Virus record (IMG/VR): IMGVR_UViG_3300021197_001489
Coordinates: 1 to 64,000 of that record
Direction: 5' to 3' (one strand)
Length of the DNA: 64,000 nt
Shown here: piece after piece, positions 3,025 through 63,500 of the stretch
Position numbering within the stretch: position 1 is the stretch's first letter
Layout of the letters: the number at the start of each line of letters is the position of its first letter
Notes under the pieces: model-generated
Seen by the model: the letters and a program-made list of their open reading frames with translations, nothing else
Database searches by the model: none
Told to the model about the DNA's origin: nothing
Made by a program: the position numbers and the translations under genes

Positions 3025-3744
3025 ATGTCTTATAAAAGAGTAACTGCTATTGGTGATAGCTTCACTCGTGGTGACGAACTGGCTGATTGTCCTGATTATC
3101 CATCCGACGGTAAGGGCAGTCACATGACCTGGCCGGCATTGATTGCCAAATCTATAAATGCTGAATATAAATGTATGGCAGTCGGCGGCAAAGGCAACCA
3201 ATGGACAAGTTGGGTAGTTGCAAAAAAAATATGTGATGCACATGAGTATGGAAACACTCCCTCGCTTTTTATTATAAACTGGAGTTGGTTTGAGCGATTT
3301 GACTATGTTAATATTGATGACGATTTGTGGGTAACCACTCACCCAGGGCATGAAAATAAAATAGATCATTATTTTTATCGTAATTTAGACAGTGAATTGT
3401 GGAACTTATTTAGAAACTTACAACAAATACACAGCACAATTTCTCTACTGAAACAGCACAACATTGATTTTATTATGACTTGCCTAGATCCAACATACAA
3501 TACTAACGTAAAAGATTTTCGTTCTGATAGTTTTGTCCAGGATATTAGAGGGCAAGCATGGACCAAAGTCATTGCCCAATTGCAAGAACAAGTATTACCA
3601 TATATCATTGCGTTTAACGGGATGAGTTTTTTAGATTGGGCTAACCATCATAATTATCAACTTGGACCAAATGGTCATCCGTTAGAAGAAGCACATGCTG
3701 CGGCTGCTGAGTATGTACGGCGTACAGTGCCGTTACTGCACTAA
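3025..3744 (+). CDS. SGNH/GDSL-like hydrolase fold protein
   Basis: N-terminal GDSF, C-terminal GHP..EAH; paralogous to 43500 and 54586 ORFs. Confidence 0.6.
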   Translation: MSYKRVTAIGDSFTRGDELADCPDYPSDGKGSHMTWPALIAKSINAEYKCMAVGGKGNQWTSWVVAKKICDAHEYGNTPSLFIINWSWFERFDYVNIDDDLWVTTHPGHENKIDHYFYRNLDSELWNLFRNLQQIHSTISLLKQHNIDFIMTCLDPTYNTNVKDFRSDSFVQDIRGQAWTKVIAQLQEQVLPYIIAFNGMSFLDWANHHNYQLGPNGHPLEEAHAAAAEYVRRTVPLLH

Positions 3745-3771
3745 ATAGCAGTAGTTATTAAGGATAATGTT

Positions 3772-4281
3772 ATGCAAGCAAACTATGAAAAGTGTTTAGA
3801 AACTATACTACATCACGAAGGCGGCTATGTAAATCATCCTAAAGATCCAGGTGGAGAAACCAACTTGGGTGTTACCAAAAGAGTCTATGAAGACTTTGGT
3901 GGTGAGAAGGATATGAAAGACCTTTTAATTGAGGACGTTGCTCCTATCTATGAAAAGAATTACTGGGGCAGAATGAAATGCGGCGACATGCCAAGTGGGC
4001 TTGATTTGTGTGTGTTTGACTTTGGAGTTAATGCAGGAACTGGGCGTAGTGCAAAGTACTTGCAAACAATGATTGGCACTGTGGCAGATGGCGGCATTGG
4101 ACCTAATACACTAGGCGCACTGGCTAACTATGTGGAAGAAGTTGGAGTTGAAGGTGCTATAAGAAACTTTCAGGAAGCACGACAGGAATACTACGAAAGT
4201 TTAAGCACATTTGAAACATTTGGACGTGGCTGGACCCGACGTGTTGATGAAACTACAGAACTTGCGGTTTCAATGATCTAA
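3772..4281 (+). CDS. Endolysin, glycoside hydrolase family 108 with PG-binding domain
   Basis: HEGGYVNHPKDPGGETNLGVT, FDFGVNAG, DGGIGPNT, FGRGWTRR motifs. Confidence 0.92.
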   Translation: MQANYEKCLETILHHEGGYVNHPKDPGGETNLGVTKRVYEDFGGEKDMKDLLIEDVAPIYEKNYWGRMKCGDMPSGLDLCVFDFGVNAGTGRSAKYLQTMIGTVADGGIGPNTLGALANYVEEVGVEGAIRNFQEARQEYYESLSTFETFGRGWTRRVDETTELAVSMI

Positions 4282-6817: not shown

Positions 6818-9118
6818 ATGCAACAGAATCCTGAAATTGAACATATCCTAGGACAAGCGCAACGCTTGGCAAAAACCAAAAAGCATGCTTATGTAACGCT
6901 GGAGCATTTGACACTTGCATTGGTTAGACATACTCCGTTTTGGAATTGCCTTGAAAAGTTTGGAGCCAGCCCAGTTGCTATTGACGAAGAGCTAGAACTT
7001 TACCTTGATGCGCAAATGGGATTGATTGATCATAAAGATCGCAGCGAACCAAAGAAAACCAATGCAATAGAAAGAGTGTTTAATCGAGCATTAACACAGG
7101 TGATGTTTGGCGGGCGGCGCAGCATGGAAACTGTTGATATCTGGTTAGCCATCATAGCAGAAAACAACAGTCATGCACAGTACTTTATGCTAAAGCATGG
7201 CGTTACCAAGCAAGAGTTTGTGCCGTTTTGGCAAGAGAATTATGCTCGTCGAAATAAGTCACCTGACATGGTTGCAGATCAAGCAGACGAGATCCTGGAA
7301 GAGCATTGTACAAATATCACACAACTTGCAGTAGATGACAAACTTGAGCCTGTGATTGGGCGCGATGCTGAACTAGAAGAAATTGTCACTGTGTTAGCCA
7401 AACGTTTTAAAAGCAATGCGCTATTGGTTGGCGATCCTGGCGTTGGCAAAACTGCTATTGCCGAAGGTCTTGCCACATTGATCAAAGACAACCATGTACC
7501 TACGTTCTTGCAAAACTTTGAAGTGTGGGGATTGGAAATTGGCAGTTTGCTAGCAGGCTCAAAATATCGCGGCGAGTTTGAAGAAAAACTTAAAGACGTT
7601 ATTGCTGCACTGGAAACAAAGAAAAACTGCATACTGTTTATTGACGAAGCGCACACCATGAAAGGCGCAGGCGCAGGAGGTGGCGGCGGCTTAGATTTTG
7701 CCAACATGCTCAAACCAGCAATTACCAAAAACAATATCAAAGTAGTAGCAAGCACAACTTGGGAAGAGTTTTACGAAAGTTTCGAACAGGATCGTGCGCT
7801 AATGAGACGTTTTTATAGAATCAGCATTGACGAACCTGATCAAGCAACCACAGTTAAAATATTGGAAGGGCTAAAGCCACGGCTTGAAAAGTTTCACAAT
7901 GTGAAAGTTGACAGTCCTGCTATTGTTAAAGCAGTTGACCTCGCCACACGTTACATGGCTGACAAAAAAAATCCTGATAAGAGCATTGACTTAATTGATG
8001 CTGCCTGTGCTGTTGAGCGTGTAAAAGATCAAGAAGGTTTAGTGGTCACTGAAGATCTCATTGATGTGCAAGTATCTCGTATTGCAAATATTCCAGAAAC
8101 CAAAGTCAAAAGCGATGCTAGCGATAAAGTGCTTGAACTTGACAGCAATATTAAACAACGTCTGTTTGGTCAAGATCATGTTGTTGACGAAGTGCTAGAA
8201 AGACTCTACGTGAACTATGCCGGCATCAGTACCACTGGACGGCCAATGGGTGCGTTTCTGTTCTTAGGTCCAACTGGTACAGGTAAAACTGAATTCGCAA
8301 AATTGCTAGCAGAAAACCTGGACATGGAAATGCTGCGTTACGACATGAGTGAGTATCAAGATCGCCACACGGTGAGCAGCCTACTTGGTGCACCCCCGGG
8401 CTTTGTGGGATACAACGACAGCAATCTTGGCGGCGGCAAACTGATCAGTGATGTTAGCAAACATCCATACAGTGTGCTACTGTTTGATGAAATTGAAAAG
8501 GCACACCCTGACGTAAGCAATATTTTCCTACAAATGATGGATGAAGGAAAGATTGCTGGTGCAAATGGAAAAGTTGTTGATGTTAAAAACTGTATTATTA
8601 TTATGACATCAAACTTGGGTGCTAGAGATAATGAAAACAACAACATTGGCTTTGGACAAGACTTAACAAAAACAGGATCCGAGGACAAAGCAGTTAAAGA
8701 CTTCTTTAAACCTGAGCTTCGTAATCGACTGGATCTTACTGTTAAATTTAAAACACTTGAGACACTGGCCATTAAGAAAATTGTTGCCAAGTTCACAGGC
8801 GAGTTACGCAAAAGTCTCAAAAGTAAAAACATCAATCTTATTGTTACTGAGGCATTGGTTGATCGTTTAGTTGAAGTGGGATATGATCCTAAAATGGGAG
8901 CAAGACCATTGGGACGCAAGATTGATGAGTTAATCAAAGTTCCGCTGTCAAAGAAAATACTGTTTGAAAAACTAAGTAATTGTCACGTCACTGCTGACTG
9001 GGTGCGGATTAAAGCTAAGAAATATGCTGTAGGTCTTACCAGCAAGCCTAAAACAACAGTGAGTGGCGGCGAAGTAAATCAGGATGGTATTGTAATTGTT
9101 AACGAATCAGAAAATTAA
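6818..9118 (+). CDS. clpA: ClpA-like AAA+ unfoldase
   Basis: Clp-N domain, two NBDs (GDPGVGKT/FIDEAH; GPTGTGKT/LFDEIEK), IGF ClpP-docking loop, no ClpB middle domain. Confidence 0.92.
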   Translation: MQQNPEIEHILGQAQRLAKTKKHAYVTLEHLTLALVRHTPFWNCLEKFGASPVAIDEELELYLDAQMGLIDHKDRSEPKKTNAIERVFNRALTQVMFGGRRSMETVDIWLAIIAENNSHAQYFMLKHGVTKQEFVPFWQENYARRNKSPDMVADQADEILEEHCTNITQLAVDDKLEPVIGRDAELEEIVTVLAKRFKSNALLVGDPGVGKTAIAEGLATLIKDNHVPTFLQNFEVWGLEIGSLLAGSKYRGEFEEKLKDVIAALETKKNCILFIDEAHTMKGAGAGGGGGLDFANMLKPAITKNNIKVVASTTWEEFYESFEQDRALMRRFYRISIDEPDQATTVKILEGLKPRLEKFHNVKVDSPAIVKAVDLATRYMADKKNPDKSIDLIDAACAVERVKDQEGLVVTEDLIDVQVSRIANIPETKVKSDASDKVLELDSNIKQRLFGQDHVVDEVLERLYVNYAGISTTGRPMGAFLFLGPTGTGKTEFAKLLAENLDMEMLRYDMSEYQDRHTVSSLLGAPPGFVGYNDSNLGGGKLISDVSKHPYSVLLFDEIEKAHPDVSNIFLQMMDEGKIAGANGKVVDVKNCIIIMTSNLGARDNENNNIGFGQDLTKTGSEDKAVKDFFKPELRNRLDLTVKFKTLETLAIKKIVAKFTGELRKSLKSKNINLIVTEALVDRLVEVGYDPKMGARPLGRKIDELIKVPLSKKILFEKLSNCHVTADWVRIKAKKYAVGLTSKPKTTVSGGEVNQDGIVIVNESEN

Positions 9119-14418: not shown

Positions 14419-17232
14419 ATGAAAGCAACCTGGTTCGAAAATAAAGAATTAATAACACTGTACACTGATGAACGCTATTTTGGCGCAGATGTGCCTGACA
14501 GTTACGCAAAGCGTCCTAGCAAGCCTGTGCCAGTAGACAGTTTGTTTGGCTACGAGCCGTCAAGCAAGATGGATGACATACATCACAAAGATGAAGTATT
14601 ACAAATTGCATTAAAAATGAAATCAGGTACCTGGGACGGCGACCCTATCGTGGTTCGCAAAGATCCTAAAGGCTATCAAGTGTTGGACGGACATCATAGA
14701 ATGCATGCAGCTCGCAAAGCAGGCTTGGACACACTTGATGCAGTCATAGTTGGTCACGAAGATATAGAATATTCAGATGAAGTCAAAGAACAAAAGGTAA
14801 ATGAAGATACCGAAGAGTTCATGCACGGTGATTGTCCTATATTTGCAATAGCACTTAGTCGACTAAGCGGACTTCCACTACAAGCAATGCTTGATTATAG
14901 CGATGAATTAGATAAAACTGTTCTTGTACATGCTTTTGTAGGGTATAAAAACGGACAAGTAATCGATGCAAGTGGTGTTCGCAGTATCGAAAGCATAGAA
15001 GATGACTATCCAGTTGAAGATGAACCGTATGTTACAGACATAAGTGAAAAAGAATTAATTGCATTAGGTTATGATGGAAACTGTCCTACAATAGATATTG
15101 CAAAACAACATGCAGAAAAAGTATTATCAACATTAAACGAAGCATCGGGTTACATACCAACTGCCGCACAAGCAAACGATCCTCGTTTTAAAACTGCACT
15201 CACTGTAGATGTGCGTCCGGGTGAAGATCAACGCAATATTTCAAAACTGGGTCTTGATCTAAACAAAGAACTGGTAAAGAAGACATCGCCAAAACGCAAA
15301 AACAAAAACTCAGTTCACACACTGCAAAATCTAGGACTAGCTGAAAGTCTTGCACTTGATTACCAAATAATGAAAGAAGATGATCTATTCGAAGTAAACA
15401 TGAGCCCTGGCGCATTGCGTGACTGGGCAAAAAGTGACGAAGCAAAAGGCATTGTTGCAGGCTTTGAAATGGAACTTATTTTTGCAGATACTGAAGGGGC
15501 TGATGGTGATTATGATGAAGCAATACCAGACTGGGACAGAGATGAAGGTCATAGAGGGCGCAGTTTTGATGCTGTAATTGACTGGTTTGACGATGACGAA
15601 TATGGTTATGCTATCAGCAACGATAATCCAGAACGTACCCGTGAACAAATGGATGAAGACTTCTTTGAAAAGGCCGACGAATGGGTAAACTCAGAGTTTG
15701 AAGAAGTAGCTGCTGAAAAAGTTCGTGAGATCATGGACGACGATGTTTGGGATGCAACCAAAGAAGAACGTTACGATGATACAGCAAACGAACTGTTTGA
15801 AAAAAGCTATGAAGCATTGGATGAAGAAGAACAAGAACAAGTTAGAGATACAGCATTTGACTACTATCTAAACGAAGTTGATGAGGCAGTCAGTGATCAG
15901 TACAATAATGAATACTGGGAACAGGCCATGGAAGACTTCCGTGAAGATCGCTGGGGCGACTATACCTGGGTACAATATTACAACGACGCTGATATAACTT
16001 ACATGAGTGATATAGCCGAACGCTTTGGAATAGCCTGGCCATTTTTAACTGGTGGCGGCGGCCTTGGAAATCGCAGTTGGGAAGAAATTGAACAGTCATT
16101 GATCAACGAACCGCTTGCTGACACAGACTTTTCCATAACCATTGGCGCTGGCTATCATGGCACTGCACGGCGCGACAACTTGTTTATTCTAGAACCTGAC
16201 AGCAGCCTGGAATCAGATGATGGCAGTGACACTGGCGTAGAAATTGTATCGCCGCCAATGCCATTGGGACTGGCAACAACCACACTGGAAAACATGCTAA
16301 TTTGGGCCAAAGACCCAGACACTGATGCTTACACAAACGGCAGCACAGGCTTGCACATGGGCATGAGTGTTCCAGGAACAGAGAATGTTGACTATGTGAA
16401 ACTGGTATTGTTCTCAGGTGACAAGTATATACTGGAAAAATACGGACGATCGGCCAACAGTTACACACCAAGTGCGCTTGACCAGTTACAGCGCAGAGGT
16501 CAAATGTTTGTGCAAAATCCAGAGATACTGAATGATATACTGGCAAAGATGCACGACAAATTAGACGATGCCGCCGAAGGCCTTATTCGCGGCAGCACAG
16601 GTGACATGAAGTACACTTCAATGAGCATAAAGAAAGGCTACATTGAATTCCGTTCACCAGGCGGAGACTACTTGTCAATGGACATTCCTGATGTTATCAA
16701 CACCATGCTGAGATTTGCCAGAGCTATGAAGATTGCCAGTGATCCAAATGCATACAGACAAGAGTACCAAAAGAAACTGTACAAATTAACAACCGCAGGC
16801 GGCGAAGGCATTGTTAATAAATTTAATAAACTGTTTGCAGATTATCAGACAGGAACACTCAGTGCCGAAAGTCTAAAGCGGCAATGGGCTAATTTAGTAT
16901 CAGATGAGAATACTACTATATTAAACAAACTAGATGATAAGCCTGATACCAAACGTGTCGGACTTGCAAAGCAAATACTGCAACCCAAGCCAAGTGTGGG
17001 TGCAGACAATGCAGCAGACAGTCAGCAGGTGCAACAGCGAGTAGAACCAAAGAACTATAATTACATGATGCCAATGGTTGACTTGGCGGGCGACGTGCAA
17101 AACACAGCGACAGGCACTGTAACAGCAACCAGCGAAGACGAAGCCAAAAGGCTAATCAATACTGAAGTAAGAGCCCGGAATCCAGACTTGCAACCTCTGT
17201 GGAGCCAAAGTAGAATAGAACAAGGCAGATAA
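14419..17232 (+). CDS. Multidomain late protein: ParB-like N-terminus plus amidoligase-2 (COOH-NH2 ligase) domain
   Basis: PIVVR...VLDGHHRMHAA; GFEMEL, EPDSSL, GVEIVSPP, TNGSTGLH, YIEFRSPGG; late box ATAAATA 14405. Confidence 0.7.
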   Translation: MKATWFENKELITLYTDERYFGADVPDSYAKRPSKPVPVDSLFGYEPSSKMDDIHHKDEVLQIALKMKSGTWDGDPIVVRKDPKGYQVLDGHHRMHAARKAGLDTLDAVIVGHEDIEYSDEVKEQKVNEDTEEFMHGDCPIFAIALSRLSGLPLQAMLDYSDELDKTVLVHAFVGYKNGQVIDASGVRSIESIEDDYPVEDEPYVTDISEKELIALGYDGNCPTIDIAKQHAEKVLSTLNEASGYIPTAAQANDPRFKTALTVDVRPGEDQRNISKLGLDLNKELVKKTSPKRKNKNSVHTLQNLGLAESLALDYQIMKEDDLFEVNMSPGALRDWAKSDEAKGIVAGFEMELIFADTEGADGDYDEAIPDWDRDEGHRGRSFDAVIDWFDDDEYGYAISNDNPERTREQMDEDFFEKADEWVNSEFEEVAAEKVREIMDDDVWDATKEERYDDTANELFEKSYEALDEEEQEQVRDTAFDYYLNEVDEAVSDQYNNEYWEQAMEDFREDRWGDYTWVQYYNDADITYMSDIAERFGIAWPFLTGGGGLGNRSWEEIEQSLINEPLADTDFSITIGAGYHGTARRDNLFILEPDSSLESDDGSDTGVEIVSPPMPLGLATTTLENMLIWAKDPDTDAYTNGSTGLHMGMSVPGTENVDYVKLVLFSGDKYILEKYGRSANSYTPSALDQLQRRGQMFVQNPEILNDILAKMHDKLDDAAEGLIRGSTGDMKYTSMSIKKGYIEFRSPGGDYLSMDIPDVINTMLRFARAMKIASDPNAYRQEYQKKLYKLTTAGGEGIVNKFNKLFADYQTGTLSAESLKRQWANLVSDENTTILNKLDDKPDTKRVGLAKQILQPKPSVGADNAADSQQVQQRVEPKNYNYMMPMVDLAGDVQNTATGTVTATSEDEAKRLINTEVRARNPDLQPLWSQSRIEQGR

Positions 17233-50258: not shown

Positions 50259-50465
50259 ATGGCAGCTAAGAAAAACAAAGATTCAAAAGCCTGGATGATA
50301 CCAGAGGGTGAAAAACGTGAAAATGCAACATATCATTTTCTTGCCCGCAAAAGCATAAGCATGATCCGTGAAGGTAAGAAATTGCGTATGCGTAAGTATC
50401 ATCCTAAATTAAAACAACATGTTTGGTTTGTAGAAACAAAGATGCCAAGCCACAGCGCAAAATGA
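50259..50465 (+). CDS. rpmG: Ribosomal protein bL33-like
   Basis: KLRMRKYHPKLKQHVWFVETK matches the bL33 C-terminal KLxxxKYxPxxxxHVxFxExK pattern; N-terminus divergent. Confidence 0.7.
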   Translation: MAAKKNKDSKAWMIPEGEKRENATYHFLARKSISMIREGKKLRMRKYHPKLKQHVWFVETKMPSHSAK

Positions 50466-51145
50466 ATCAATACATATTTGATGTTGACGGCACACTAACG
50501 CCCAGCAGAGAAAAAATTGATCCTGAGTTTGGTGCATGGTTCATTGACTTTTGCAACAACCACAGTGTGTATCTGGTAACAGGCAGTGACCGTCTGAAGA
50601 CCATTGAACAGGTAGGCGAAACAGTGTACAACAGTTGTGTTCGTGTGTATCAGTGTTCAGGAAATGAAGTATTTGAGAAAAACAAACGTATTCGTGTTAG
50701 TGATTGGCAGTTACCCGATGCAGCACAAACCTGGCTACAAGAACAGTTGGACAAAAGTAAATTTTATAGAAAGACTGGCACCCACATTGAACACAGGACT
50801 GGCATGGTTAACTTTAGCATTGTTGGTCGACAAGCCAACATGGAAGAACGAGCAATGTATGTTCAATGGGATGAACACAAACTGGAACGCATGATAATTG
50901 CTGCACAGTTTAACTTTCGCTTTCAAGATCTGCAGGCAACTATTGGTGGCGACACTGGCATTGATATCTATGCTAAAGGCAAAGACAAAGCACAGATTGT
51001 TAAAGACTTTGACCTAACAGATACGCTGTGGTTCTTTGGTGATGCTATGCGTCCAAGCGGCAACGATTACTCACTGAGCAAAGTTGTAAATCATGCAGTG
51101 CCAGTGAAGGATTGGCAAGATACGTGGCGTATATTAAGTGAATAG
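50462..51145 (+). CDS. HAD-IIB phosphomannomutase-like phosphatase
   Basis: FDVDGTLT, VTGSD, IEHRTGMVNFSIVGR, FGDAMRPSGNDY. Confidence 0.8.
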   Translation: MNQYIFDVDGTLTPSREKIDPEFGAWFIDFCNNHSVYLVTGSDRLKTIEQVGETVYNSCVRVYQCSGNEVFEKNKRIRVSDWQLPDAAQTWLQEQLDKSKFYRKTGTHIEHRTGMVNFSIVGRQANMEERAMYVQWDEHKLERMIIAAQFNFRFQDLQATIGGDTGIDIYAKGKDKAQIVKDFDLTDTLWFFGDAMRPSGNDYSLSKVVNHAVPVKDWQDTWRILSE

Positions 51146-51596
51146 TATGAATATTACTGTTACAGGCACTAGTAAAGGATTAGGTAAAAGTATTGCAGAC
51201 TATTGTGAACAATCACACACAGTGGTCAGGTTTGGTCGAGAATATGACTTGCGTGATTACTCCGTGCGGCAAAAAATTATACAACAAGAAAGTGATATTC
51301 TTATTAGTGTAGCAAAACCTAATTTTTCACAAACGGAATTATTGTATGAGTGGTATAATGTACATGGTACTAGTAAGCGGGTGATTAATATTGGAAGTGC
51401 GGTTGTACATAAAGAATTTTGGGGAGATGATATTCACATGATGAGGTATCATACACAAAAACGCAGTCTCGCACATGCTGTGGCTCAAATTGATCATCCA
51501 AACATCTCTATTATAAACCCAGAACACCTCTACAACAAAAATGCATTTGATTATGCTGTATTGGAAAAATGGTGCAAGGAGAATATTTTTATATGA
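51138..51596 (+). CDS. Short-chain dehydrogenase-like protein (short)
   Basis: TGTSKGLG, INIGS, YHTQK (YxxxK). Confidence 0.7.
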   Translation: MNSMNITVTGTSKGLGKSIADYCEQSHTVVRFGREYDLRDYSVRQKIIQQESDILISVAKPNFSQTELLYEWYNVHGTSKRVINIGSAVVHKEFWGDDIHMMRYHTQKRSLAHAVAQIDHPNISIINPEHLYNKNAFDYAVLEKWCKENIFI

Positions 51597-52738
51597 AACC
51601 AAAAGATTTATACGAAAATAGAGTATTTTGCTCAGCACCATGGAACAATTTATATATCAATCCAGATGGAAAAATTCTAACCTGCAGTATAGGAAAATGC
51701 AATGTAGGAAATCTTAGTGATAACAGGATACAGGATATTGTCCAGGACAATGATGTCTTAAAAGAAATTCAACAAAGTATGATAGACGGCAAGCGCCATA
51801 AAAATTGTGGTACTTGCTATAAGCTAGAAGATAGTGGAGTAAGTTACAGTTTAAGAAAGCACTACAAAAGCAAAATTAGTAATTTTAATAATTTAGATCA
51901 GTATGATATTGCTTCAGGCAGTTTAGATGTGACCAGTTTTGATCTAAGATACGACAACACTTGTCAAAATGCATGTGTTTACTGTGGTCCGGCACTAAGC
52001 AGTAGATGGGAAAAAGAACTGGGTGTAACAGTTCCAAAGCCAAGTCTTGGCAATATAGATAATACCAAGAAGTATGTATCAGAAAATCTTGCGAATCTCA
52101 AAGAAATATACCTAGCAGGTGGAGAACCTTTGGTTACCAAAGACTTTGCTGTTATATTAGAAGAGCTGCACAAAGTAAATCCAAATTGCAAAATTAGAAT
52201 TAACAGTAATATTAAAAATATTAATACTCCGGTGTACGAATTAAGCAAAAAGTTTCGTAATCTAAGATATACACTGAGTGCAGAAGCAGTTGAACAGCAA
52301 TTCGAGTACATAAGATATCCGCAAACATGGAGTAGTTTTCAAAAAAATGTTAAACAAGTTATTGATGAAGTCCCTTCATATAACTTTAACATGGCATTAA
52401 ATGTTCTTAACATGTATGGATTATTTGATTGCATAGACTATCTTAGAAGTATAGGAGCACACGATAATAGTTTAATAATTACGCATGTAAACAATCCATC
52501 TTGGTGTAATATTAATAATCTGTCAGATGAATTATTAGATGAATTTGTTGAACGTTGTAACCTGTACATGTCACAAACAGATCCAAAATACAGTCTGTAT
52601 TCAGCATTGGAAGGTTGTGTAAATTTTGTTCGGGTATCTTTCGATAAAAATATCAATGATACAAGATTAAATTTAGAAACATTAGATATAAGAAGAAACT
52701 TAAATAGTAAAAATATTTTTCCATATATTTACAAATAG
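51593..52738 (+). CDS. Radical SAM protein with N-terminal SPASM/twitch-like domain
   Basis: CQNACVYC, AGGEP; N-terminal CSAPW...C...CGTC. Confidence 0.85.
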   Translation: MKPKDLYENRVFCSAPWNNLYINPDGKILTCSIGKCNVGNLSDNRIQDIVQDNDVLKEIQQSMIDGKRHKNCGTCYKLEDSGVSYSLRKHYKSKISNFNNLDQYDIASGSLDVTSFDLRYDNTCQNACVYCGPALSSRWEKELGVTVPKPSLGNIDNTKKYVSENLANLKEIYLAGGEPLVTKDFAVILEELHKVNPNCKIRINSNIKNINTPVYELSKKFRNLRYTLSAEAVEQQFEYIRYPQTWSSFQKNVKQVIDEVPSYNFNMALNVLNMYGLFDCIDYLRSIGAHDNSLIITHVNNPSWCNINNLSDELLDEFVERCNLYMSQTDPKYSLYSALEGCVNFVRVSFDKNINDTRLNLETLDIRRNLNSKNIFPYIYK

Positions 52739-55495: not shown

Positions 55496-56830
55496 ATGTT
55501 TGAATTACTTTCTGCTTTTGTTGTAGGATTAGGTTTAGGTGTTGTGTCTGGAATTGTTCCAGGTCTCAATGTGTTTGTAAGTATCTTACTGGTATTTCCA
55601 CTGTTGATAACTTGGGAACCAACCAGCATTATGTTTATGTATATCACATTGGCCAGTGTGCATCAGTACTTTGGCAGTGTAAGTGCCACTGTGTTTGCTA
55701 TACCTGGCACCAGCACCAGTTTACCTGCACTACACGAAGGGCATGGTATGTTTCAAAGTGGCAGAGGCAGCGAAGCAATTATGACAGCCGCAATTGGCAG
55801 TTTCTTTGCTAGTTTTTTTGCTATTGTTCTAATACATTTCATGTTGCCTTATCTCAGCATTTTCTATCAAATTTTTAACACACACATACAGGCATTGCTG
55901 TTAACAGTTGCCGCAGTAACAATCATAGTGTTCGCTGACAACAAAATTTGGATTAGTCTATTGCTTTGGATAGTAGGAAATACACTGGCCATGGTAGGCC
56001 TACACGAATACTATGGCGGCATTACATTTATGACTTTTGGAATTCCGGCACTGTACACAGGTATTGATCTATTACCTGTGATGATTTCACTGTATGTGGT
56101 TCCTGTGTTTTTGAGAGCAAGTAAGTCAGGCGGCCGTATTGAATTTAAAGGTGTAAGCATGGGAGGCTATGTTGATGCCGCGCGCCGCATGTACAAACAA
56201 ATGAAAATGACACTTTTGCGTAGCAGTATTATTGGAGCATTAGTTGGCTTCATACCTGGCATCAGTTGGGGGTTGAGTACAATGCTTGCTTACAACTCCG
56301 AACTGGGTATACGCAAACGTAAAAAACTATACAATACACAGGGAGATGCAAACTGTTTGGTGGCTGCAGAAAGCAGTAACAACGCAGGTGTGTACACCAG
56401 TATGGTGCCTATGCTGTTTGCAGGTATACCTATCACTGCAAGTACTGCACTCATATACAACATATTCATGTTTAGAGGCATCAACCCAACGCTGCCATTC
56501 TTTGAAAGTTTATACGAAATAACCTTAGTTGGGTTTGGCATAAGCAGTGTTATAGGATTGCTTATAGCAGGCAAATATGTTAATTTTCTCAAGTTTTTAA
56601 GTGGACTGGACATACGCAAATTTTACACTGTGATGTTTTTGCTGCTGGTTGTGATTTGCTACTTTGTGGCAGAACAATACTATGCAGGATTTGACAACAT
56701 GATGATGTTGGTTTGTCTGTTACCTTTTGGGTACCTACTTAGAAATTACAACACAATGCCATTGATATATGGTTTTGTGTTGCAAGATATTTTTATAGAA
56801 AGTGTTTATAGACTAACATTTTTCTATTAA
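55496..56830 (+). CDS. Tripartite tricarboxylate transporter TctA-like permease
   Basis: SGIVPGL, IPGTSTS, GALVGFIPG, AAESSNNA, GIPITAS motifs; about 12 TM. Confidence 0.75.
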   Translation: MFELLSAFVVGLGLGVVSGIVPGLNVFVSILLVFPLLITWEPTSIMFMYITLASVHQYFGSVSATVFAIPGTSTSLPALHEGHGMFQSGRGSEAIMTAAIGSFFASFFAIVLIHFMLPYLSIFYQIFNTHIQALLLTVAAVTIIVFADNKIWISLLLWIVGNTLAMVGLHEYYGGITFMTFGIPALYTGIDLLPVMISLYVVPVFLRASKSGGRIEFKGVSMGGYVDAARRMYKQMKMTLLRSSIIGALVGFIPGISWGLSTMLAYNSELGIRKRKKLYNTQGDANCLVAAESSNNAGVYTSMVPMLFAGIPITASTALIYNIFMFRGINPTLPFFESLYEITLVGFGISSVIGLLIAGKYVNFLKFLSGLDIRKFYTVMFLLLVVICYFVAEQYYAGFDNMMMLVCLLPFGYLLRNYNTMPLIYGFVLQDIFIESVYRLTFFY

Positions 56831-56857
56831 AAAAACCTTTTTTTATTAAAAAGGATG

Positions 56858-56886
56858 TTGACAACAAGCTGTTTTGTTGTTATTAT
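56858..56886 (+). promoter_or_regulatory. sigma70-like promoter
   Basis: TTGACA-17 nt-TATTAT. Confidence 0.6.
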
Positions 56887-56912
56887 ACTGAACAAACTTT
56901 AAAGGAGTTATA

Positions 56913-57812
56913 ATGTTTGATATTAGAAAAACTGTTTCAGTGGCAGTATTAGCACTGACAATGATGATTGGCGCAAACGGTACATCAGTTGCCGGCACAG
57001 ACATCACCACCCTTAAAGGTCCTGGTGATGTTAATGTAATGCTGATGTATCGCGCAGGCGGTTCATATGGACGTATGAGTCAGCAGGTGATTGCACCAAA
57101 TCTTGGTGATGATTTTAAAGAAATCAAAAACATTCGTGGTTGTGCAAAGATGGCAGATTTTGTCAAAAACACAGACGAAAAAATGTTTGGTTTGTGGGAT
57201 TGGTTCTCAACCAATGAGCCACTAGCAGACGGCAGCAAGAATCCTTGCTTCCTTGAGCAAGAAAACATTGTTAGTATTAGCCATGCATTTCCATATCGTG
57301 CATGTTTCGTAGCTGGTGCCAATGGCCGCAGTCTTGATGACTTCGTAAATGGCAAAGGTATTAAGGTTGGCATCCTGGCCAATGGTGTATACAAAGCACA
57401 GGCAACTCAGGTAATACATAGCATCAACCCTGATGCAAAAATCATTCCTTATAGCAGTAGTAAAAAATACATTCCTGGATTAAAGTCTGGCGAAGTAGAC
57501 TATCTTTACTCAGCACAAATGCGTGATTGGATGACATGTGTTGCTTCAACAGATGCAAAAGAAACACAGTTTACACCCTTTGGTACACTGTCAGACAACT
57601 TTCTTGCAGACAAAAACACCTATCCAGCATTTGCAGCATTTAATATGGACATGGACGAAGCATTTGCATTCGCGCAAAAAATTCAACAAAGTCCAGAAAT
57701 GGTCAAGTTCCTTGCTGGTGTCGGACACGTTATGCCGACACAGGTGACAATGCCACGTCGTGAGCAGCTGGCCTTTATGAATGAATGGTACGCAACCATT
57801 CAGGAAAAATAA
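56913..57812 (+). CDS. TctC/Bug-like periplasmic binding protein (divergent)
   Basis: Signal peptide; YRAGGSYGRM echoes the xxGGxxD motif; adjacent to the tctA-like gene. Confidence 0.5.
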   Translation: MFDIRKTVSVAVLALTMMIGANGTSVAGTDITTLKGPGDVNVMLMYRAGGSYGRMSQQVIAPNLGDDFKEIKNIRGCAKMADFVKNTDEKMFGLWDWFSTNEPLADGSKNPCFLEQENIVSISHAFPYRACFVAGANGRSLDDFVNGKGIKVGILANGVYKAQATQVIHSINPDAKIIPYSSSKKYIPGLKSGEVDYLYSAQMRDWMTCVASTDAKETQFTPFGTLSDNFLADKNTYPAFAAFNMDMDEAFAFAQKIQQSPEMVKFLAGVGHVMPTQVTMPRREQLAFMNEWYATIQEK

Positions 57813-59439: not shown

Positions 59440-59874
59440 ATGGAAACTGTTGCAATTAATTTTGATTTAGACAGTAACAATTATGCTGCTGGGTTGGGCT
59501 TTTTGGTTGTGTACCAAAATCAAGTCCTTGTTGATATTGACAAGGTTGCCAGCAAGAATAGTATTAAATTTGATCTTGACGTTGAAGACGGAGATCACGC
59601 ACTGCAATTTACAATGAAGAATAAAACTATAGATAATACTGTAGTAGACGAACACGGCAATATTGTATCTGATTCCTACTTAACTATTGCCAATATGCAT
59701 TTGGAAAATGTCGATCTTGGTTACACCTTTATTGAAAACAGTGTATACCATCATGACTTCAATGGCAGCAAGGACAAAATAGAAGAAACATTCTATGGCA
59801 CAATGGGCTGCAATGGTACTGTGACATTTCGATTTACCACGCCGTTTTACATTTGGTTATTGGAAAATATTTAA
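59440..59874 (+). CDS. Hypothetical late protein
   Basis: ATAAGTA 5 nt upstream; beta-rich. Confidence 0.6.
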   Translation: METVAINFDLDSNNYAAGLGFLVVYQNQVLVDIDKVASKNSIKFDLDVEDGDHALQFTMKNKTIDNTVVDEHGNIVSDSYLTIANMHLENVDLGYTFIENSVYHHDFNGSKDKIEETFYGTMGCNGTVTFRFTTPFYIWLLENI

Positions 59875-60233
59875 TCTATGCTGCCAGGAAACATTTCTTC
59901 AATTACAGCGTCGAATATTTCTATCATGCCAAAGCCAATTATTAAACAGACTGGGAAAACAATAAAGAACACTATAGCAAGCAGTATACGCATAACTCGG
60001 TTGCAACGCTCAAAGTAAAAGTGTGCAAACCATTTAAGAGCACCCTTTACTCGTTCTTTAATCCATTCGCCAAAAAAGTTTCTAAACAGGCGCATAACAA
60101 TAAGAACTGGGCTGGTTAAAACATCCCAGAGCATTAATACAAGATCAACCAATAAGTCCACAATGTGATCTATAGTTAGCCACGCTTTGAATTTTTGCCA
60201 GCGTTGTTTAGTAGCAGAGAAAATCTTATTCAT
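59871..60233 (-). CDS. Membrane protein
   Basis: Hydrophobic segments; GTAAATA late box 4 nt upstream on the minus strand. Confidence 0.55.
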   Translation of the reverse strand: MNKIFSATKQRWQKFKAWLTIDHIVDLLVDLVLMLWDVLTSPVLIVMRLFRNFFGEWIKERVKGALKWFAHFYFERCNRVMRILLAIVFFIVFPVCLIIGFGMIEIFDAVIEEMFPGSID

Positions 60234-60272
60234 AGCGTATTTACTTTATAAATATGAGTAACGGAGAGCAGC

Positions 60273-60722
60273 ATGAGTATGTTTTTAAGGTGGTGGCTAC
60301 TGTTCTGCACCAGTTGTGCGGCTATGTTTACCGCCTATAGTTTTGGGTTTGTTGATGCACTGATTGCAAAAGATGTCACGCGACTTAGTTTTGCTATACT
60401 TGCAGTGTTCTTTTTAAGTAGCATGTATGTTGGATGGATGACCTATAAACGAAGCAAAGGTGCAGTAGTGAAAGTTGGTGTAAATGTTGGATGGTTTATC
60501 ACTGAACTACTGCTTGCCTTGGGCATGATTGGAACAGTTATTGGATTTATCTTGATGCTGGGCGGAAGTTTCGAAAGTTTAAATCTTTCTGATACTGGCA
60601 GCGTAAAGACTGCACTAACTGCTATGGCAATAGGTATGAGTACTGCACTGTATACTACACTCGTAGGAATGGTGTGCAGCCAAATCCTCAAGGTGCAGCT
60701 GGTCAATGTCGAATCCAAATAA
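60273..60722 (+). CDS. MotA/TolQ/ExbB proton-channel family protein
   Basis: LGMIGTVIG and GMSTALYTTLVG TM motifs. Confidence 0.8.
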   Translation: MSMFLRWWLLFCTSCAAMFTAYSFGFVDALIAKDVTRLSFAILAVFFLSSMYVGWMTYKRSKGAVVKVGVNVGWFITELLLALGMIGTVIGFILMLGGSFESLNLSDTGSVKTALTAMAIGMSTALYTTLVGMVCSQILKVQLVNVESK

Positions 60723-61371
60723 TAGATTAAAATACAAAAGCAGTATAGGCTTTACTGATTTACTATTCAATCTTGTTATTGGGTTTGTATACCTTTTTGT
60801 GATTGCATTTATACTGATTAATCCTGTTGCTAAAAAAGGCGATGTAATTAAAAAAGCAGAATACTTGGTTACAATAGAATGGAATCATGAGTACAATGAT
60901 GATATTGATTTGTGGATTAAAGACCCTGCCGGCAACATTGTTAGTTTTTTACAAAAAAGCAAAGGCTTGATGCATTTAGAAAAAGATGATCTAGGTCACA
61001 GCAACGATAGCTATCACAAAGGTGCACAAAAGAAAACACTTTATCTCAACAGAGAAGTTATAACACTGAGAGGCACACTAGAAGGCGAATATCAAGTAAT
61101 GGCACATGTGTACAACAGAAAGTTTACAATGAGAGACGGCGAAGTACGTCAGGACTTGCCAGGTATAATAGAAGTCACAGTAATAAAGATTAATCCTTAT
61201 TTGGAAACTTATTTTGAAAGAGTGCCCTATATTGAAACTGGACAAACATTAAGTTTGGTAAGGTTTACAGTGGGAGAAAAACATAGATATCTTGATCACA
61301 ATAATGATCCAAGTTCTTTTATAACTAAAAAAGGAACCAGCGGTTTGGGGAGGTATAACACAATACCATAA
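60706..61371 (+). CDS. MotB/ExbD-like single-TM partner with beta-sandwich periplasmic domain
   Basis: FTDLLFNL TM with conserved Asp; DIDLW...P and D..G motifs. Confidence 0.55.
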   Translation: MSNPNNRLKYKSSIGFTDLLFNLVIGFVYLFVIAFILINPVAKKGDVIKKAEYLVTIEWNHEYNDDIDLWIKDPAGNIVSFLQKSKGLMHLEKDDLGHSNDSYHKGAQKKTLYLNREVITLRGTLEGEYQVMAHVYNRKFTMRDGEVRQDLPGIIEVTVIKINPYLETYFERVPYIETGQTLSLVRFTVGEKHRYLDHNNDPSSFITKKGTSGLGRYNTIP

Positions 61372-61832
61372 TGTTTGATTTCAACCTACTTCCATTTTTT
61401 GCCAGCATGTTGGTTCTAACACTGATAGTGTTGGGTATTGGTGTGCATTTTTATCGCAATGCACTTGTGATGTTTATAGTGATTCCTGTAGCACTGTTTT
61501 GTGCATTTTCAGGATACAACACTATTACCACAATGCTAGGCTATCCTATTAAACACATTATTCCTGAAGATAGTATGTATCTCAATCATATTGAAAATGG
61601 TGACGGCTCAGAATTGTATGTATGGGTATTAGAACCAGAACGCATGATGCCAAAAAACTACAGTATTCCTGCAACAGACGAAAATAAGAAACAAATGCAA
61701 CGTGCCAAAGGTCGCACAGACAAAGGTATAAACCAACAAATAGGCAAATACAAAAGCGAGCGCAGTGGCGAGCGCAACGAAGGCGACTATATGGTTTATG
61801 ACTTTAGCATTGATCCGCAAGGGTTGAAATAA
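61371..61832 (+). CDS. Two-TM membrane protein, third gene of the module
   Basis: Stop-start coupled; hydrophobic N-terminus. Confidence 0.55.
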   Translation: MFDFNLLPFFASMLVLTLIVLGIGVHFYRNALVMFIVIPVALFCAFSGYNTITTMLGYPIKHIIPEDSMYLNHIENGDGSELYVWVLEPERMMPKNYSIPATDENKKQMQRAKGRTDKGINQQIGKYKSERSGERNEGDYMVYDFSIDPQGLK

Positions 61833-61921
61833 CATATACACTGCCTATTAGCCAATAGTTTTACAAACTTTGTTCTTTTGTGTATAATATTTAAATAGCT
61901 GCATATTCCAAAGGAGAAACT

Positions 61922-62410
61922 ATGCCAACATTTGTATACATGACTGCATGCGATGGATGTGGACATTGCGTCGACATTTGTCCAAGTGACATCATGCACA
62001 TTGATCCAGTAACAAGACGAGCAGTAAACATAGAACCAAACTTTTGCTGGGAGTGCTATTCATGCGTAAAAGCATGTCCACAAAATGCAATTGACGACAG
62101 AGGCTACAGTGACTTTGCGCCTATGAATCACAAGGTCAGAGTATTACGAGAACCAGAAAAAGGCGTTATCAGTTGGCGACTCAAATTCAGAGACGGCAGA
62201 GAAAAACACTTTGAATCACCTATTCGCACAACACCTTGGGGCAGTATACAATGCGCCAGTGAGTACGACGTGCCAGATGCAACACTAAATGACTCACAGC
62301 AACTAGCACATGAACCAGAATACTTACTGGCAGATGGCGGGTTGCGCATGATTAGTAAGAATAAATTTGTTAAATACGAGTACACAGGAGACACACATGC
62401 CACCACGTAA
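61922..62410 (+). CDS. aprB: Adenylylsulfate reductase beta subunit (2x[4Fe-4S] ferredoxin)
   Basis: MPTFVYMT.CDGCGHCVDICPSDIMH...NIEP..CWECYSCVKACP...RGYSDFAP; IRTTPWG. Confidence 0.92.
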   Translation: MPTFVYMTACDGCGHCVDICPSDIMHIDPVTRRAVNIEPNFCWECYSCVKACPQNAIDDRGYSDFAPMNHKVRVLREPEKGVISWRLKFRDGREKHFESPIRTTPWGSIQCASEYDVPDATLNDSQQLAHEPEYLLADGGLRMISKNKFVKYEYTGDTHATT

Positions 62411-63500
62411 TCATAATAACTGGACAGCAACACCCAAGGTTGAATACATCAGCAGCGAATGCTACAATAACTTTGAAGTGTTTGAACAAGAGCAAGAGCA
62501 CATCTTTTCAAAAGTGTGGGTACCAATGTGCCACAAGTCAGAGCTTTCGGAAGCAGGTAGGTTTAGAACAACCAAGATTGCTGGTCAAAATGTTATAGCA
62601 ATTAACAATGGCGACACTATTAAAACATACTTAAATCCTGGAAAGTTCAGTACTCCAGCTGGATCAATGACACGAGTTCAATTCTTAATGGATGACTATA
62701 CTCCATTGCATACTGAAGTCAAACATGGTGGAATGGTATGGACAACGTTGGATTCTAATCCTACACAAAGCGTAGATGAGTGGACAGCAGGTGCATTTGA
62801 TTGTATTGCTGATGCCATTGATACCGAAGAGATGGAAGTATTCCATTACCATAAAGCTGTTATAGATACCAATTATAAACTGTGGCATGATACCAACAGT
62901 GAATTCTATCACGACTTCATGCATTATTTTAATAGAGTGAGTGGCTTCAATGATGAATATTTCGCTAGAAAAAATATCCCTTTTGATAATGGTCACGTTA
63001 ATGTGTCTAGCTTTACTGTTAACTATGAAGAGTATGACGGATTTGAAGATCGCGGGGACTTATCTTTTCCCAATTTGCCGCCCAACCAGTGGTACATGGT
63101 TGACCTCTTCCCAGGATTCAATTTTAACCTCCGCGGGAGTGCATATCGTTCAGACTCGGTGACTCCACTAGGTCCTAACAAAGTTCTTATCGAATTTAGA
63201 GGTTATGGATTACTCAATGATACTCCTGAAGAAAGACAAACACGCATTAAGCACCACAATAGTATATGGGGACCTTTCGGCAGAAACTTGCACGAAGACC
63301 TTATTGGCGTGGCTGGTCAAGGCACTACAATGCGTGAAGGTACAGAATCAAGAAACATACTGCACGGCAGACATGAAAATTCTACAATACATGATGAAGT
63401 TGGAATGAGACATTATTATGAAGCATGGGGTAACATGTTGGGTGTAAGTCCAATGAATCCACTACAAGGACAACTACAAGATGTTAGTAAGGCTGCGTAA
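62397..63500 (+). CDS. Ring-hydroxylating oxygenase alpha subunit, MsmA-like, lacking the Rieske cluster motif
   Basis: FHYHKAV..TNYKLWHDTNSEFYHD.MH, WGPFGRNLHED, TIHDE.GMRH; no CxH...CxxH. Confidence 0.8.
   Translation: MPPRNHNNWTATPKVEYISSECYNNFEVFEQEQEHIFSKVWVPMCHKSELSEAGRFRTTKIAGQNVIAINNGDTIKTYLNPGKFSTPAGSMTRVQFLMDDYTPLHTEVKHGGMVWTTLDSNPTQSVDEWTAGAFDCIADAIDTEEMEVFHYHKAVIDTNYKLWHDTNSEFYHDFMHYFNRVSGFNDEYFARKNIPFDNGHVNVSSFTVNYEEYDGFEDRGDLSFPNLPPNQWYMVDLFPGFNFNLRGSAYRSDSVTPLGPNKVLIEFRGYGLLNDTPEERQTRIKHHNSIWGPFGRNLHEDLIGVAGQGTTMREGTESRNILHGRHENSTIHDEVGMRHYYEAWGNMLGVSPMNPLQGQLQDVSKAA

What the first reader, a model, noticed from the sequence alone, without database searches (positions are those of the whole stretch)
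60273..61832. Phage-encoded MotA/ExbB-like ion-driven motor module of three coupled genes
Seen: an ExbB/TolQ/MotA-family gene overlapping a single-TM gene with the plug Asp (FTDLL) and a beta-rich periplasmic domain rather than an OmpA-like PG-binding domain, then a third membrane gene; TATAAATA lies upstream. Established: 5:2 motors power TonB, Tol and flagella, and form ZorAB of the Zorya defence system. Inference: superinfection exclusion, a Zorya or Tol/Ton decoy, or PMF manipulation linked to lysis timing.
Basis: partly seen in the sequence, partly recalled or inferred. Interest (0 to 1): 0.6.

Follow-up and report, generated by a model that had tools for sequence, protein, structure and literature searches.

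The report
Phage copy of a stripped-down MotA/MotB-like module
A 316-kb marine phage carries three coupled membrane genes that look like a minimal ion-driven MotAB/ExbBD-type motor unit; the same uncharacterised trio sits in many alphaproteobacterial chromosomes, and all phage copies lack the cytoplasmic part of the channel subunit.

Summary
Genes A (60273-60722), B (60706-61371) and C (61371-61832) are real, overlapping, and lie in a virus record.

- **A** passes Pfam's MotA_ExbB cut-off and keeps the TM3 and TM4 pore motifs.
- **B** has one N-in helix with an invariant Asp18. Its periplasmic beta-sandwich is related to DUF2135 and TerD, not OmpA.
- **C** is a two-helix hairpin with a small periplasmic domain of unknown fold.

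New findings:
- The trio is syntenic in about 80 viral contigs and 29 Rhizobium/Sinorhizobium phage genomes, under purifying selection.
- It is also chromosomal, next to housekeeping genes, in 53 of 401 sampled alphaproteobacterial genomes, including Azospirillum brasilense Sp7.
- Cellular A proteins carry a cytoplasmic loop and tail that every phage A lacks.

Best reading: an old, selected, streamlined phage copy of an unnamed host envelope module. It probably works as an ion-driven stator-type complex that acts in the periplasm through B and C.

Not shown: 5:2 assembly, ion flow, and the role in infection. The complex prediction gave no verdict. Exclusion, decoy and lysis-timing roles have no direct support. 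TATAAATA upstream is present but not above chance.

The parts
60247..60254 (+). TATAAATA motif in the 39-nt gap before gene A (possible -10-like element)
   Evidence: Present. There are 2 in the window against 3.4 expected and 14 in the genome, of which 6 lie 19-46 nt before a start codon. A promoter role is not shown.
60263..60266 (+). GGAG ribosome-binding site, 6 nt before the ATG of A
   Evidence: Read from the sequence.
60273..60722 (+). Gene A: minimal 4-TM MotA/ExbB-family channel subunit (149 aa), N-in and C-in, with no cytoplasmic domain
   Evidence: PF01618 over the cut-off. The profile matches C. jejuni MotA 6ykm at E 0.012 and other MotA/ZorA chains across LGxIGTVxG (TM3) and ALYTTLxG (TM4). 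Invariant residues are D34, G87, T88, G91, A125, G132. Topology follows from charge counts. The loop and tail are shorter than in cellular relatives.
60706..61371 (+). Gene B: MotB/ExbD-position subunit (221 aa). N-in single TM with invariant Asp18, short Lys-rich linker, periplasmic DUF2135/TerD-like beta-sandwich with an invariant acidic cluster.
   Evidence: Alignments. AF2 model. VIA-align to TerD gives Z 9.4 and 8.2. hhalign to E. coli YfaP (DUF2135) gives probability 85%, E 6e-6. The language-model feature search picks DUF2135 at 0.89. The deep profile search finds 2,192 representative clusters, and the best 150 listed (154-327 aa, mostly about 200-230) have the domain at the C-terminal end.
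61371..61832 (+). Gene C: TM-hairpin protein (153 aa) with a small periplasmic alpha/beta domain, a Gly/charged linker and a conserved C-terminal YDF motif
   Evidence: AF2 model, pLDDT 76.6. Alignment of 36 sequences. N-out, loop-in, domain-out topology from charge counts. It lies directly after B in nearly all loci. No Pfam, PDB or fold match for the soluble part.

Best explanation
The three genes are a phage-borne, streamlined copy of an uncharacterised three-protein inner-membrane module that is native to Alphaproteobacteria.

A is a MotA/ExbB-family channel subunit reduced to its four membrane helices. B takes the place of MotB/ExbD: one helix with the ion-carrying Asp, then a periplasmic DUF2135/TerD-like beta-sandwich with a likely metal-binding acidic cluster. 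C is a membrane hairpin with a small periplasmic domain and a flexible tail.

Most likely A surrounds a B dimer, 5:2 by analogy. Ion flow past Asp18 would drive a conformational or rotary cycle. The phage A has no cytoplasmic domain, so the work must be delivered in the membrane and periplasm through B and C, as ExbBD does through TonB and TolQR through TolA.

The phage would express the module during infection to supply, or take over in deregulated form, this host envelope function.

Shown: family membership of A; the architectures and topologies; synteny; the distribution in phages and cells; purifying selection; loss of A's cytoplasmic parts in phages.

Inferred: assembly and stoichiometry, ion conduction, periplasmic output, metal binding, and the benefit to the phage.
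For: Family and architecture:
- A passes Pfam MotA_ExbB. It aligns to solved MotA and ZorA chains over the two pore helices.
- The residues at the Thr positions that line the ion path in PomA/MotA (my own knowledge) are invariant or nearly so: T88, T128, T129.
- B has an invariant Asp five residues into an N-in single TM helix.

Linkage:
- A/B and B/C overlap.
- Among the 87 viral sources scanned, A was found in 85, B in 87 and C in 84, adjacent and in the same order.
- No fourth gene family occurs in more than 22 of 102 loci.

Selection: dN/dS is 0.05-0.12 against the closest relative.

Cellular counterparts:
- B is found in 53 of 401 sampled genomes of the class and 13 of 401 of the phylum.
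- A-B-C are adjacent in all 16 chromosomal stretches fetched. Neighbours include spoT, rpoZ, folK, ctaA and RNase H.
- The trio is also present in Azospirillum brasilense Sp7.

Phage-specific trimming of A: the D34-to-G87 distance is 41-61 residues in all 83 viral A proteins, against 84-126 in most cellular ones. The tail after G132 is 18-28 residues against 29-77.

Periplasmic placement of the B and C domains follows from charge counts. B's domain is related to DUF2135 and TerD. Across phage and cellular copies it keeps D66, D68, D94, D95, D101, N115 and E117.
Against: - No assembly was shown. The complex job gave no verdict, score 0.14 against a mark of 0.32.
- B's TM segment has no detectable sequence homology to MotB, ExbD or TolR, so its role is assigned by position, topology and the Asp alone.
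- A's similarity to known stators is weak and limited to about 60-75 residues.
- C has no resemblance to TonB or TolA.
- The linker between B's helix and its domain is only about 12 residues, so B cannot reach far into the periplasm.
- Nothing is known about the function of the cellular module, so the benefit to the phage is a guess.
Confidence: 0.55

Rival explanations
1. PMF valve. The minimal A/B pair is used as a gated or ungated proton leak. It would depolarise the host at a set time to control lysis timing, shut off the host, or block DNA entry by later phages. B's domain and C would act as gate or sensor.
For: All phage A proteins have lost the cytoplasmic loop and tail, leaving only the channel core. 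Unplugged stator units leak protons and arrest growth (my own knowledge of MotB plug deletions). A Lys-rich linker in B faces an acidic periplasmic loop 3 of A. The module is phage-encoded, and pieces of it appear in marine RNA libraries.
Against: The same trio is kept vertically beside housekeeping genes in many bacteria, which does not fit a killing device. The periplasmic domains of B and C are under purifying selection as strong as the pore. No lysis genes were identified next to it in the window.
Confidence: 0.2
2. Uptake energiser. The trio powers import across the envelope, working like Ton, together with an inner-membrane importer. This would feed phage replication, for example with a cofactor or peptide.
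For: In 22 phage loci an SbmA/BacA-like transporter gene (PF05992, E 4e-76) lies beside the trio, directly upstream of A in most and just downstream of C in a few; in 10 loci (7 with it directly upstream of A) a ribonucleotide-reductase family gene whose one scanned member matched a B12-dependent RNR insertion domain weakly lies nearby. In the window the trio lies in a block of host-like genes that includes a TctA transporter. Some C proteins carry long Pro/Asp/Glu-rich tails, as seen in the alignment.
Against: The window's own phage has no SbmA/BacA gene. C has no TonB-like C-terminal domain. Most loci lack any transporter neighbour. Cellular neighbours are not uptake genes.
Confidence: 0.15
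3. Counter-defence decoy. The proteins poison or mimic host ZorAB, ExbBD or TolQR by mixing into their rings.
For: A gives weak hits to ZorA models (E 6e-6 to 1e-3 in PADLOC; NCBIfam ZorA).
Against: The hits cover only the shared pore helices, and MotP/PomA score equally. The true nearest relatives are an orthologous cellular trio, not Zorya, Exb or Tol. B and C have no counterpart in those systems. Identity is far too low for co-assembly.
Confidence: 0.05
4. Three unrelated small membrane proteins that happen to be neighbours, with a spurious Pfam hit for A.
For: The Pfam score is modest (30.3 bits) and covers 62 residues.
Against: Independent A homologues in Rhizobium phages and bacteria also pass the cut-off, at 26.8-38.1 bits. 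The gene order is conserved in more than 100 loci.
Confidence: 0.03

Closest known systems
Flagellar stator units MotAB / PomAB
   Same: A has four TM helices with N and C termini inside, and the TM3 GxIGT and TM4 ALxTTLxG motifs align to solved MotA chains. B is an N-in single-TM partner with an Asp near the cytoplasmic end. The genes are adjacent and overlapping.
   Different: A has no cytoplasmic torque-generating loop or tail: 149 aa here, against 246-270 aa for the solved MotA chains listed. B has no plug-linker or OmpA-like peptidoglycan-binding domain; it has a DUF2135/TerD-like beta-sandwich about 12 residues after the helix. A third protein, C, is always present. There are no flagellar genes nearby.
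ExbB-ExbD-TonB and TolQ-TolR-TolA
   Same: A three-gene logic: channel subunit, Asp-bearing single-TM subunit with a periplasmic domain, and a third membrane-anchored protein with a periplasmic part. The output is expected in the periplasm rather than the cytoplasm.
   Different: There is no homology of B to ExbD/TolR or of C to TonB/TolA. C has a two-helix hairpin, not one helix. A's TM4 lacks the Glu of ExbB/TolQ and resembles MotA/PomA instead (sequence; my own knowledge of those motifs).
ZorAB of the Zorya anti-phage system
   Same: A non-flagellar MotAB-like pair tied to phage biology, with weak profile hits of A to ZorA.
   Different: A has no long ZorA tail, and there are no ZorC/D/E-type partner genes. 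B lacks ZorB's peptidoglycan-binding domains. The module is encoded by the phage, and in bacteria it lies beside housekeeping genes rather than in defence islands.
DUF2135 (E. coli YfaP) and TerD-type beta-sandwiches
   Same: B's periplasmic domain aligns to YfaP (hhalign 85%, E 6e-6) and superposes on TerD (Z 9.4 and 8.2). It shares the W..DxDL..P.G...D...G.Y pattern.
   Different: No member of those families was found here or is known to me as the periplasmic domain of a MotB-like subunit. Pfam's own DUF2135 and TerD models do not reach threshold on B. Metal binding was not tested.

Membership tests
MotA/TolQ/ExbB channel family (Pfam PF01618) | Profile match above the curated cut-off | tested here: met
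   30.3 bits against 22.9 and 32.6 bits in the genome scan. Phage and cellular homologues score 26.8-38.1 bits.
MotA/TolQ/ExbB channel family (Pfam PF01618) | Conserved pore helices: TM3 G-x-x-G-T and TM4 polar Thr pair | tested here: met
   The alignment to solved MotA chains covers both helices. G87, T88 and G91 are invariant; T128 and T129 are invariant or nearly so.
5:2 stator-type complex (A5B2) | A pentamer enclosing a B dimer | tested here: inconclusive
   Complex prediction with A x4 + B(1-60) x2 gave 'no answer', score 0.14. A true 5:2 input was not accepted by the tool.
MotB/ExbD/TolR-type B subunit | N-in single TM helix with a conserved Asp near its cytoplasmic end, encoded directly after the A gene | tested here: met
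   D18 is invariant. The helix spans 13-38. The N-terminus is Lys/Arg-rich. The gene overlaps A.
MotB/ExbD/TolR-type B subunit | Sequence homology to ExbD/TolR (PF02472) or to the MotB plug / OmpA-like domain | tested here: not met
   No Pfam, NCBIfam or PADLOC hit. The profile of residues 1-55 finds no stator B chain in the PDB.
Flagellar stator (MotAB/PomAB) | Cytoplasmic TM2-TM3 domain and C-tail of A that contact FliG | tested here: not met
   The TM2-TM3 loop is about 16 residues, and only 9 residues follow TM4.
Ton/Tol systems | Third protein with a TonB/TolA-like single TM, a long spacer and a C-terminal domain | tested here: not met
   C is a two-helix hairpin with an unmatched 90-residue domain. 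No Pfam or PDB match.
Zorya | Long ZorA C-terminal tail and partner genes (ZorC/ZorD or ZorE etc.) | tested here: not met
   A ends just after TM4. PADLOC finds nothing for B, C or the neighbouring gene. No conserved fourth gene exists.
DUF2135 / TerD-like beta-sandwich | Fold and motif similarity of B residues about 50-200 | tested here: met
   VIA Z 9.4 to TerD over 134 residues. hhalign to YfaP gives 85%. Feature search gives 0.89. Pfam's own cut-offs are not reached, so B's domain is a distant relative, not a filed member.
DUF2135 / TerD-like beta-sandwich | Ca2+ binding by the acidic cluster | not testable with these tools
   The invariant D66, D68, D94, D95, D101, N115 and E117 are suggestive only.
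Phage lysis cassette (holin / spanin) | Adjacent endolysin, and a coiled-coil i-spanin with a lipoprotein o-spanin | tested here: not met
   The neighbours are a small membrane protein, a ferredoxin-like protein and an oxygenase-like protein. B's domain is all-beta. The rest of the genome was not scanned for lysis genes.

The most novel reading that the evidence does not exclude
This would be the first virus-encoded ion-driven stator-type motor, a membrane-only A ring with no cytoplasmic domain. It would also be the visible tip of a previously unnamed PMF-coupled envelope system of Alphaproteobacteria: A, a B subunit with a DUF2135-like domain, a hairpin protein C, and sometimes a fourth periplasmic protein. 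Phages would have taken it over and trimmed it to act on the host envelope during infection.
Probability: 0.4. Interest if true: 0.8.

Novelty: new variant of a known kind. Interest (0 to 1): 0.62.

Why it matters
MotAB-type 5:2 units are known to power flagella, Ton, Tol, gliding and Zorya. The papers I found on their diversity do not mention phage-encoded units or B subunits with this kind of domain.

Three things would follow if this reading is right:
1. It is a natural minimal version of the A subunit. That bears on which parts of the motor are needed for ion-coupled movement.
2. It is a new three-part envelope system, found in about one in eight sampled alphaproteobacterial species. No Pfam or NCBIfam family covers B or C, and the source names seen for B homologues were nearly all 'hypothetical protein'.
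3. It is a host-derived membrane machine kept under selection in many marine and rhizobial phages. This phage itself is near-identical in metagenomes of at least 12 studies.

Culturable carriers exist, so it can be tested: Rhizobium phage 16-3, the RHph phages, and Azospirillum brasilense Sp7.

Tried and rejected
**Complex prediction.**
- A x4 + B(1-60) x2 gave 'no answer', score 0.14. This is no evidence either way.

**Fold searches.**
- Foldseek against the PDB gave nothing at E <= 0.001 for B or C.
- VIA-align for C was filled by generic helical hairpins, so its soluble domain stays unmatched.
- The Atlas fold search for B returned only its own viral family.

**Sequence searches against the PDB.**
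- B residues 1-55: no stator B chain.
- C: nothing.
- B, whole or domain: only a weak motif match to a phage 'virion structural protein' 11pb_C and to a subtilisin-like protease C-domain.

**Family scans.** PHROGs gave nothing useful for A, B or C. PADLOC and NCBIfam gave only weak pore-helix hits for A.

**TATAAATA as a T4-type late promoter.** It is not enriched: 2 in the window against 3.4 expected, and 14 in 316 kb. The consensus promoter and terminator scan was uninformative.

**Literature.** No paper on phage-encoded MotA/ExbB units of this kind was found. One eLife paper lists a phage 'ExbB' as a putative metabolic gene without tests. Nothing was found on DUF2135 or YfaP function.

**Single versus multiple phage origins.** The AU test does not reject one clade of all phage copies (p 0.066). 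I therefore drop the idea that A's cytoplasmic part was lost independently several times.

**Expression.** The RNA libraries hold only short contigs over the region. DNA carry-over cannot be excluded, so transcription is not shown.

Full report
**1. What is in the window**

The window is the first 64 kb of a 316,012-bp IMG/VR virus record, CheckV 91%. It encodes a T4-type DNA polymerase, a Lon-like protease and ParB-like proteins.

Three + strand genes lie at the reported place:
- A: 60273-60722, 149 aa
- B: 60706-61371, 221 aa
- C: 61371-61832, 153 aa

A and B overlap by 17 nt. B's stop and C's start share one base (TAATG).

Upstream is a divergent 120-aa membrane-protein gene. The 39-nt gap holds TATAAATA (60247-60254) and GGAG. 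The motif is not enriched in the window or the genome, so I give it no weight.

**2. The three proteins**

*Protein A.* A passes Pfam MotA_ExbB: 30.3 bits against a cut-off of 22.9, and 32.6 bits in the genome scan. A profile of 38 homologues finds solved MotA and ZorA chains; the best is C. jejuni MotA 6ykm at E 0.012. The alignment spans LGxIGTVxG and ALYTTLxG, the two pore helices.
- G87, T88 and G91 are invariant. T128 and T129 are invariant or nearly so.
- Charge counts give N-in, four helices, C-in.

*Protein B.* B has no family hit.
- Its N-terminal helix (13-38 in the AF2 model) is almost invariant: KSxIGFTDLLFNLxxGFVxLF. D18 is never replaced.
- After a linker of about 12 Lys-rich residues comes an all-beta domain.
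- VIA-align puts TerD on top: Z 9.4 over 134 residues, and 8.2. The next hit is at 6.4.
- A language-model feature search picks DUF2135 at 0.89.
- hhalign of a 38-sequence domain profile against E. coli YfaP (DUF2135) gives 85% probability, E 6e-6.
- Phage and cellular copies all keep W59, D66, D68, L91, D94, D95, G97, D101, N115, E117 and G127. This acidic cluster resembles the Ca2+ sites known in this type of fold. That comparison is my own knowledge and was not tested.

*Protein C.* C is a TM hairpin (4-26, 31-56) followed by a beta-beta-beta-alpha-beta domain, a Gly/charged linker and a YDF end. Charge counts place the domain in the periplasm. No fold or sequence relative was found.

**3. 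The trio is a conserved unit in phages**

- B finds 29 Rhizobium/Sinorhizobium phage genomes. In the three loci examined, A-like and C-like genes lie beside it (in 16-3 with a small ORF between each pair); the A-like genes of the two RHph phages pass PF01618, while the 16-3 A (p038) was recognised only by the family profile.
- A word-limited search finds 472 unnamed metagenomic homologues.
- A pattern scan of IMG/VR gives 80 loci on contigs from 4 to 342 kb.
- Iterated profile searches over those loci find A in 85, B in 87 and C in 84 of the 87 sources. The genes are adjacent and in the same order. Exceptions are contig ends, two loci without a detectable C, and two with C 1.2 kb away.
- No other gene family accompanies the trio in more than 22 of 102 loci.
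- dN/dS against the closest relative is 0.075 (A), 0.115 (B) and 0.046 (C).
- The region is near-identical in marine metagenomes of at least 12 studies. Short pieces occur in two metatranscriptomes, which does not prove transcription.

**4. The turn: the trio is also cellular**

A scan of one genome per species with two strict peptide patterns found only 15 MAG loci. Ten or eleven of these, Geminicoccaceae and other Alphaproteobacteria, share the same chromosomal neighbours, otsA-like and GH15 genes.

A profile search then found B in 53 of 401 sampled genomes of that class, and in 13 of 401 of the phylum.

All 16 chromosomal stretches I fetched carry A, B and C side by side. Their neighbours include spoT/relA, rpoZ, folK, ctaA, RNase H and a cytochrome c. 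These are housekeeping genes, not prophage or defence-island genes.

- A second, deeper cellular clade has 4,611 unnamed clusters in the word search. It includes Azospirillum brasilense Sp7 chromid p1.
- The exhaustive profile search counts 2,192 representative clusters at E <= 0.001. The best 150 listed are 154-327 aa, mostly about 200-230, with the domain at the C-terminal end; in the full-length ones it starts near residue 45.
- Neither Pfam nor NCBIfam names the cellular B or C.

**5. Phage against cell**

Cellular A proteins are about 235-280 aa. They carry an insertion between TM2 and TM3 and a C-terminal tail, which is where MotA has its cytoplasmic domain.

| Measure | 83 viral A proteins | Most cellular A proteins |
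|---|---|---|
| D34-to-G87 distance | 41-61 residues | 84-126 residues |
| Residues after G132 | 18-28 | 29-77 |

Three cellular copies have a D34-to-G87 distance of 65.

In a B tree, most phage sequences form one large clade next to a cellular clade. The deeper cellular clade lies across the midpoint root; temperate phage 16-3 falls with it on a long branch. The tree needs few phage-cell switches: 5, against 28.7 in shuffles. A single phage clade is not rejected (p-AU 0.066). The direction of transfer is not proven. Conserved chromosomal synteny and two old cellular paralogues in one genome make a cellular origin the simpler reading.

Either way, this is not a recent, unselected capture.

**6. 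Mechanism**

The shared pore motifs, the invariant Asp and the strict coupling make a MotAB/ExbBD-type ion-driven complex the best reading. The 5:2 stoichiometry is by analogy only, because the complex job gave no verdict.

The phage A has no cytoplasmic domain. Any work must therefore be done in the membrane and periplasm, through B's beta-sandwich, which sits close to the membrane, and through C. This is the logic of ExbBD-TonB and TolQR-TolA, but B and C are not homologous to those proteins.

What the phage gains is open. I rank the options as follows:
1. Supplying or overriding the host's own module: 0.55 for the motor-module reading as a whole.
2. A timed proton leak: 0.2.
3. A Ton-like uptake energiser: 0.15. 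This is suggested by SbmA/BacA-like genes next to the trio in 22 loci. It is not supported in this phage, which has no such gene.
4. A decoy for Zorya, Ton or Tol: 0.05.

**7. Verdict**

It is a new variant of a known kind. Its architecture is unusual: a minimal A, a DUF2135-like B and a hairpin C. Its distribution is dual: many phages and about 13% of sampled alphaproteobacterial species. Both features were found in none of the family libraries or papers I could search.

No alternative genetic code was used.

Noticed in passing
window 55496-57812: The phage encodes a TctA-family large permease of a tripartite tricarboxylate transporter (PF01970, E 2.4e-69). It is followed by a 299-aa protein with a signal-peptide-like N-terminus and no family hit, possibly the binding protein. 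A host-like transporter in a jumbo phage.
   Followed up: partly
window 61922-63500: Directly after gene C lies an APS-reductase-beta-like 2x[4Fe-4S] ferredoxin (PF12139, E 1.2e-24). It overlaps a 377-aa protein with a ring-hydroxylating oxygenase alpha catalytic domain (PF00848, E 1.6e-6). A strong sigma-70-like site (TTTACA-17-TATAAT) lies at 61860-61888.
   Followed up: no
L053:2532-3551 and 21 other viral loci (e.g. L041-L064, L067, L071, L089, L098): An SbmA/BacA-like inner-membrane transporter gene (PF05992, E 4.2e-76) lies directly upstream of A, or just downstream of C, in two phage clades. A ClpP-like gene often follows C. In one clade a ribonucleotide-reductase family gene precedes A; the one member scanned matched a B12-dependent RNR insertion domain weakly. 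The window's phage has no SbmA/BacA gene.
   Followed up: partly
L109:8539-9333, L110:8192-8983, L112:9328-10116, L113:8416-9147: In four bacterial loci a fourth gene of 243-264 aa follows C directly. One copy gives a weak DUF3108-like match (E 1.4e-5, below the cut-off). It may be a periplasmic or outer-membrane partner that phages lack.
   Followed up: partly
window 59871-60233 (- strand): A divergent 120-aa membrane-protein gene lies next to A. It is shared with only 8 closely related loci, so it is not part of the conserved module.
   Followed up: partly
L004 (Rhizobium phage 16-3, DQ500118.1) 2196-4132: In temperate phage 16-3 the three genes (p038, p040, p042) are separated by two small ORFs, p039 and p041. 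Its B falls on a long branch with the deeper cellular clade.
   Followed up: partly
B residues 52-145; PDB 11pb_C residues 249-316; phrog_1735: The DDxDxW...P.G motif region of B weakly matches an 864-aa phage 'virion structural protein' in the PDB (E 0.14-0.47) and PHROG 1735 (E 0.0066). The same beta-sandwich type may also occur in virion proteins.
   Followed up: no
window 6818-9118, 14419-17232, 50423-52738: Other notable genes: a Lon-like ATP-dependent protease (phrog_4871, E 2e-231), a 937-aa protein with a ParB-like N-terminus, a phosphomannomutase-like protein, and a radical SAM/SPASM protein.
   Followed up: no
L088, L089, L098, L101 (MAG contigs labelled Legionellales, Gammaproteobacteria, Flavobacteriales, Saccharibacteria): These MAG contigs carry short, phage-type A proteins (L088, L089, L098; L101 is intermediate); L098 and L101 fall inside the viral clade of the B tree, while L088 and L089 were merged there as exact duplicates of viral rows. 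They are probably phage contigs binned into MAGs, so their taxon labels say nothing about hosts.
   Followed up: partly
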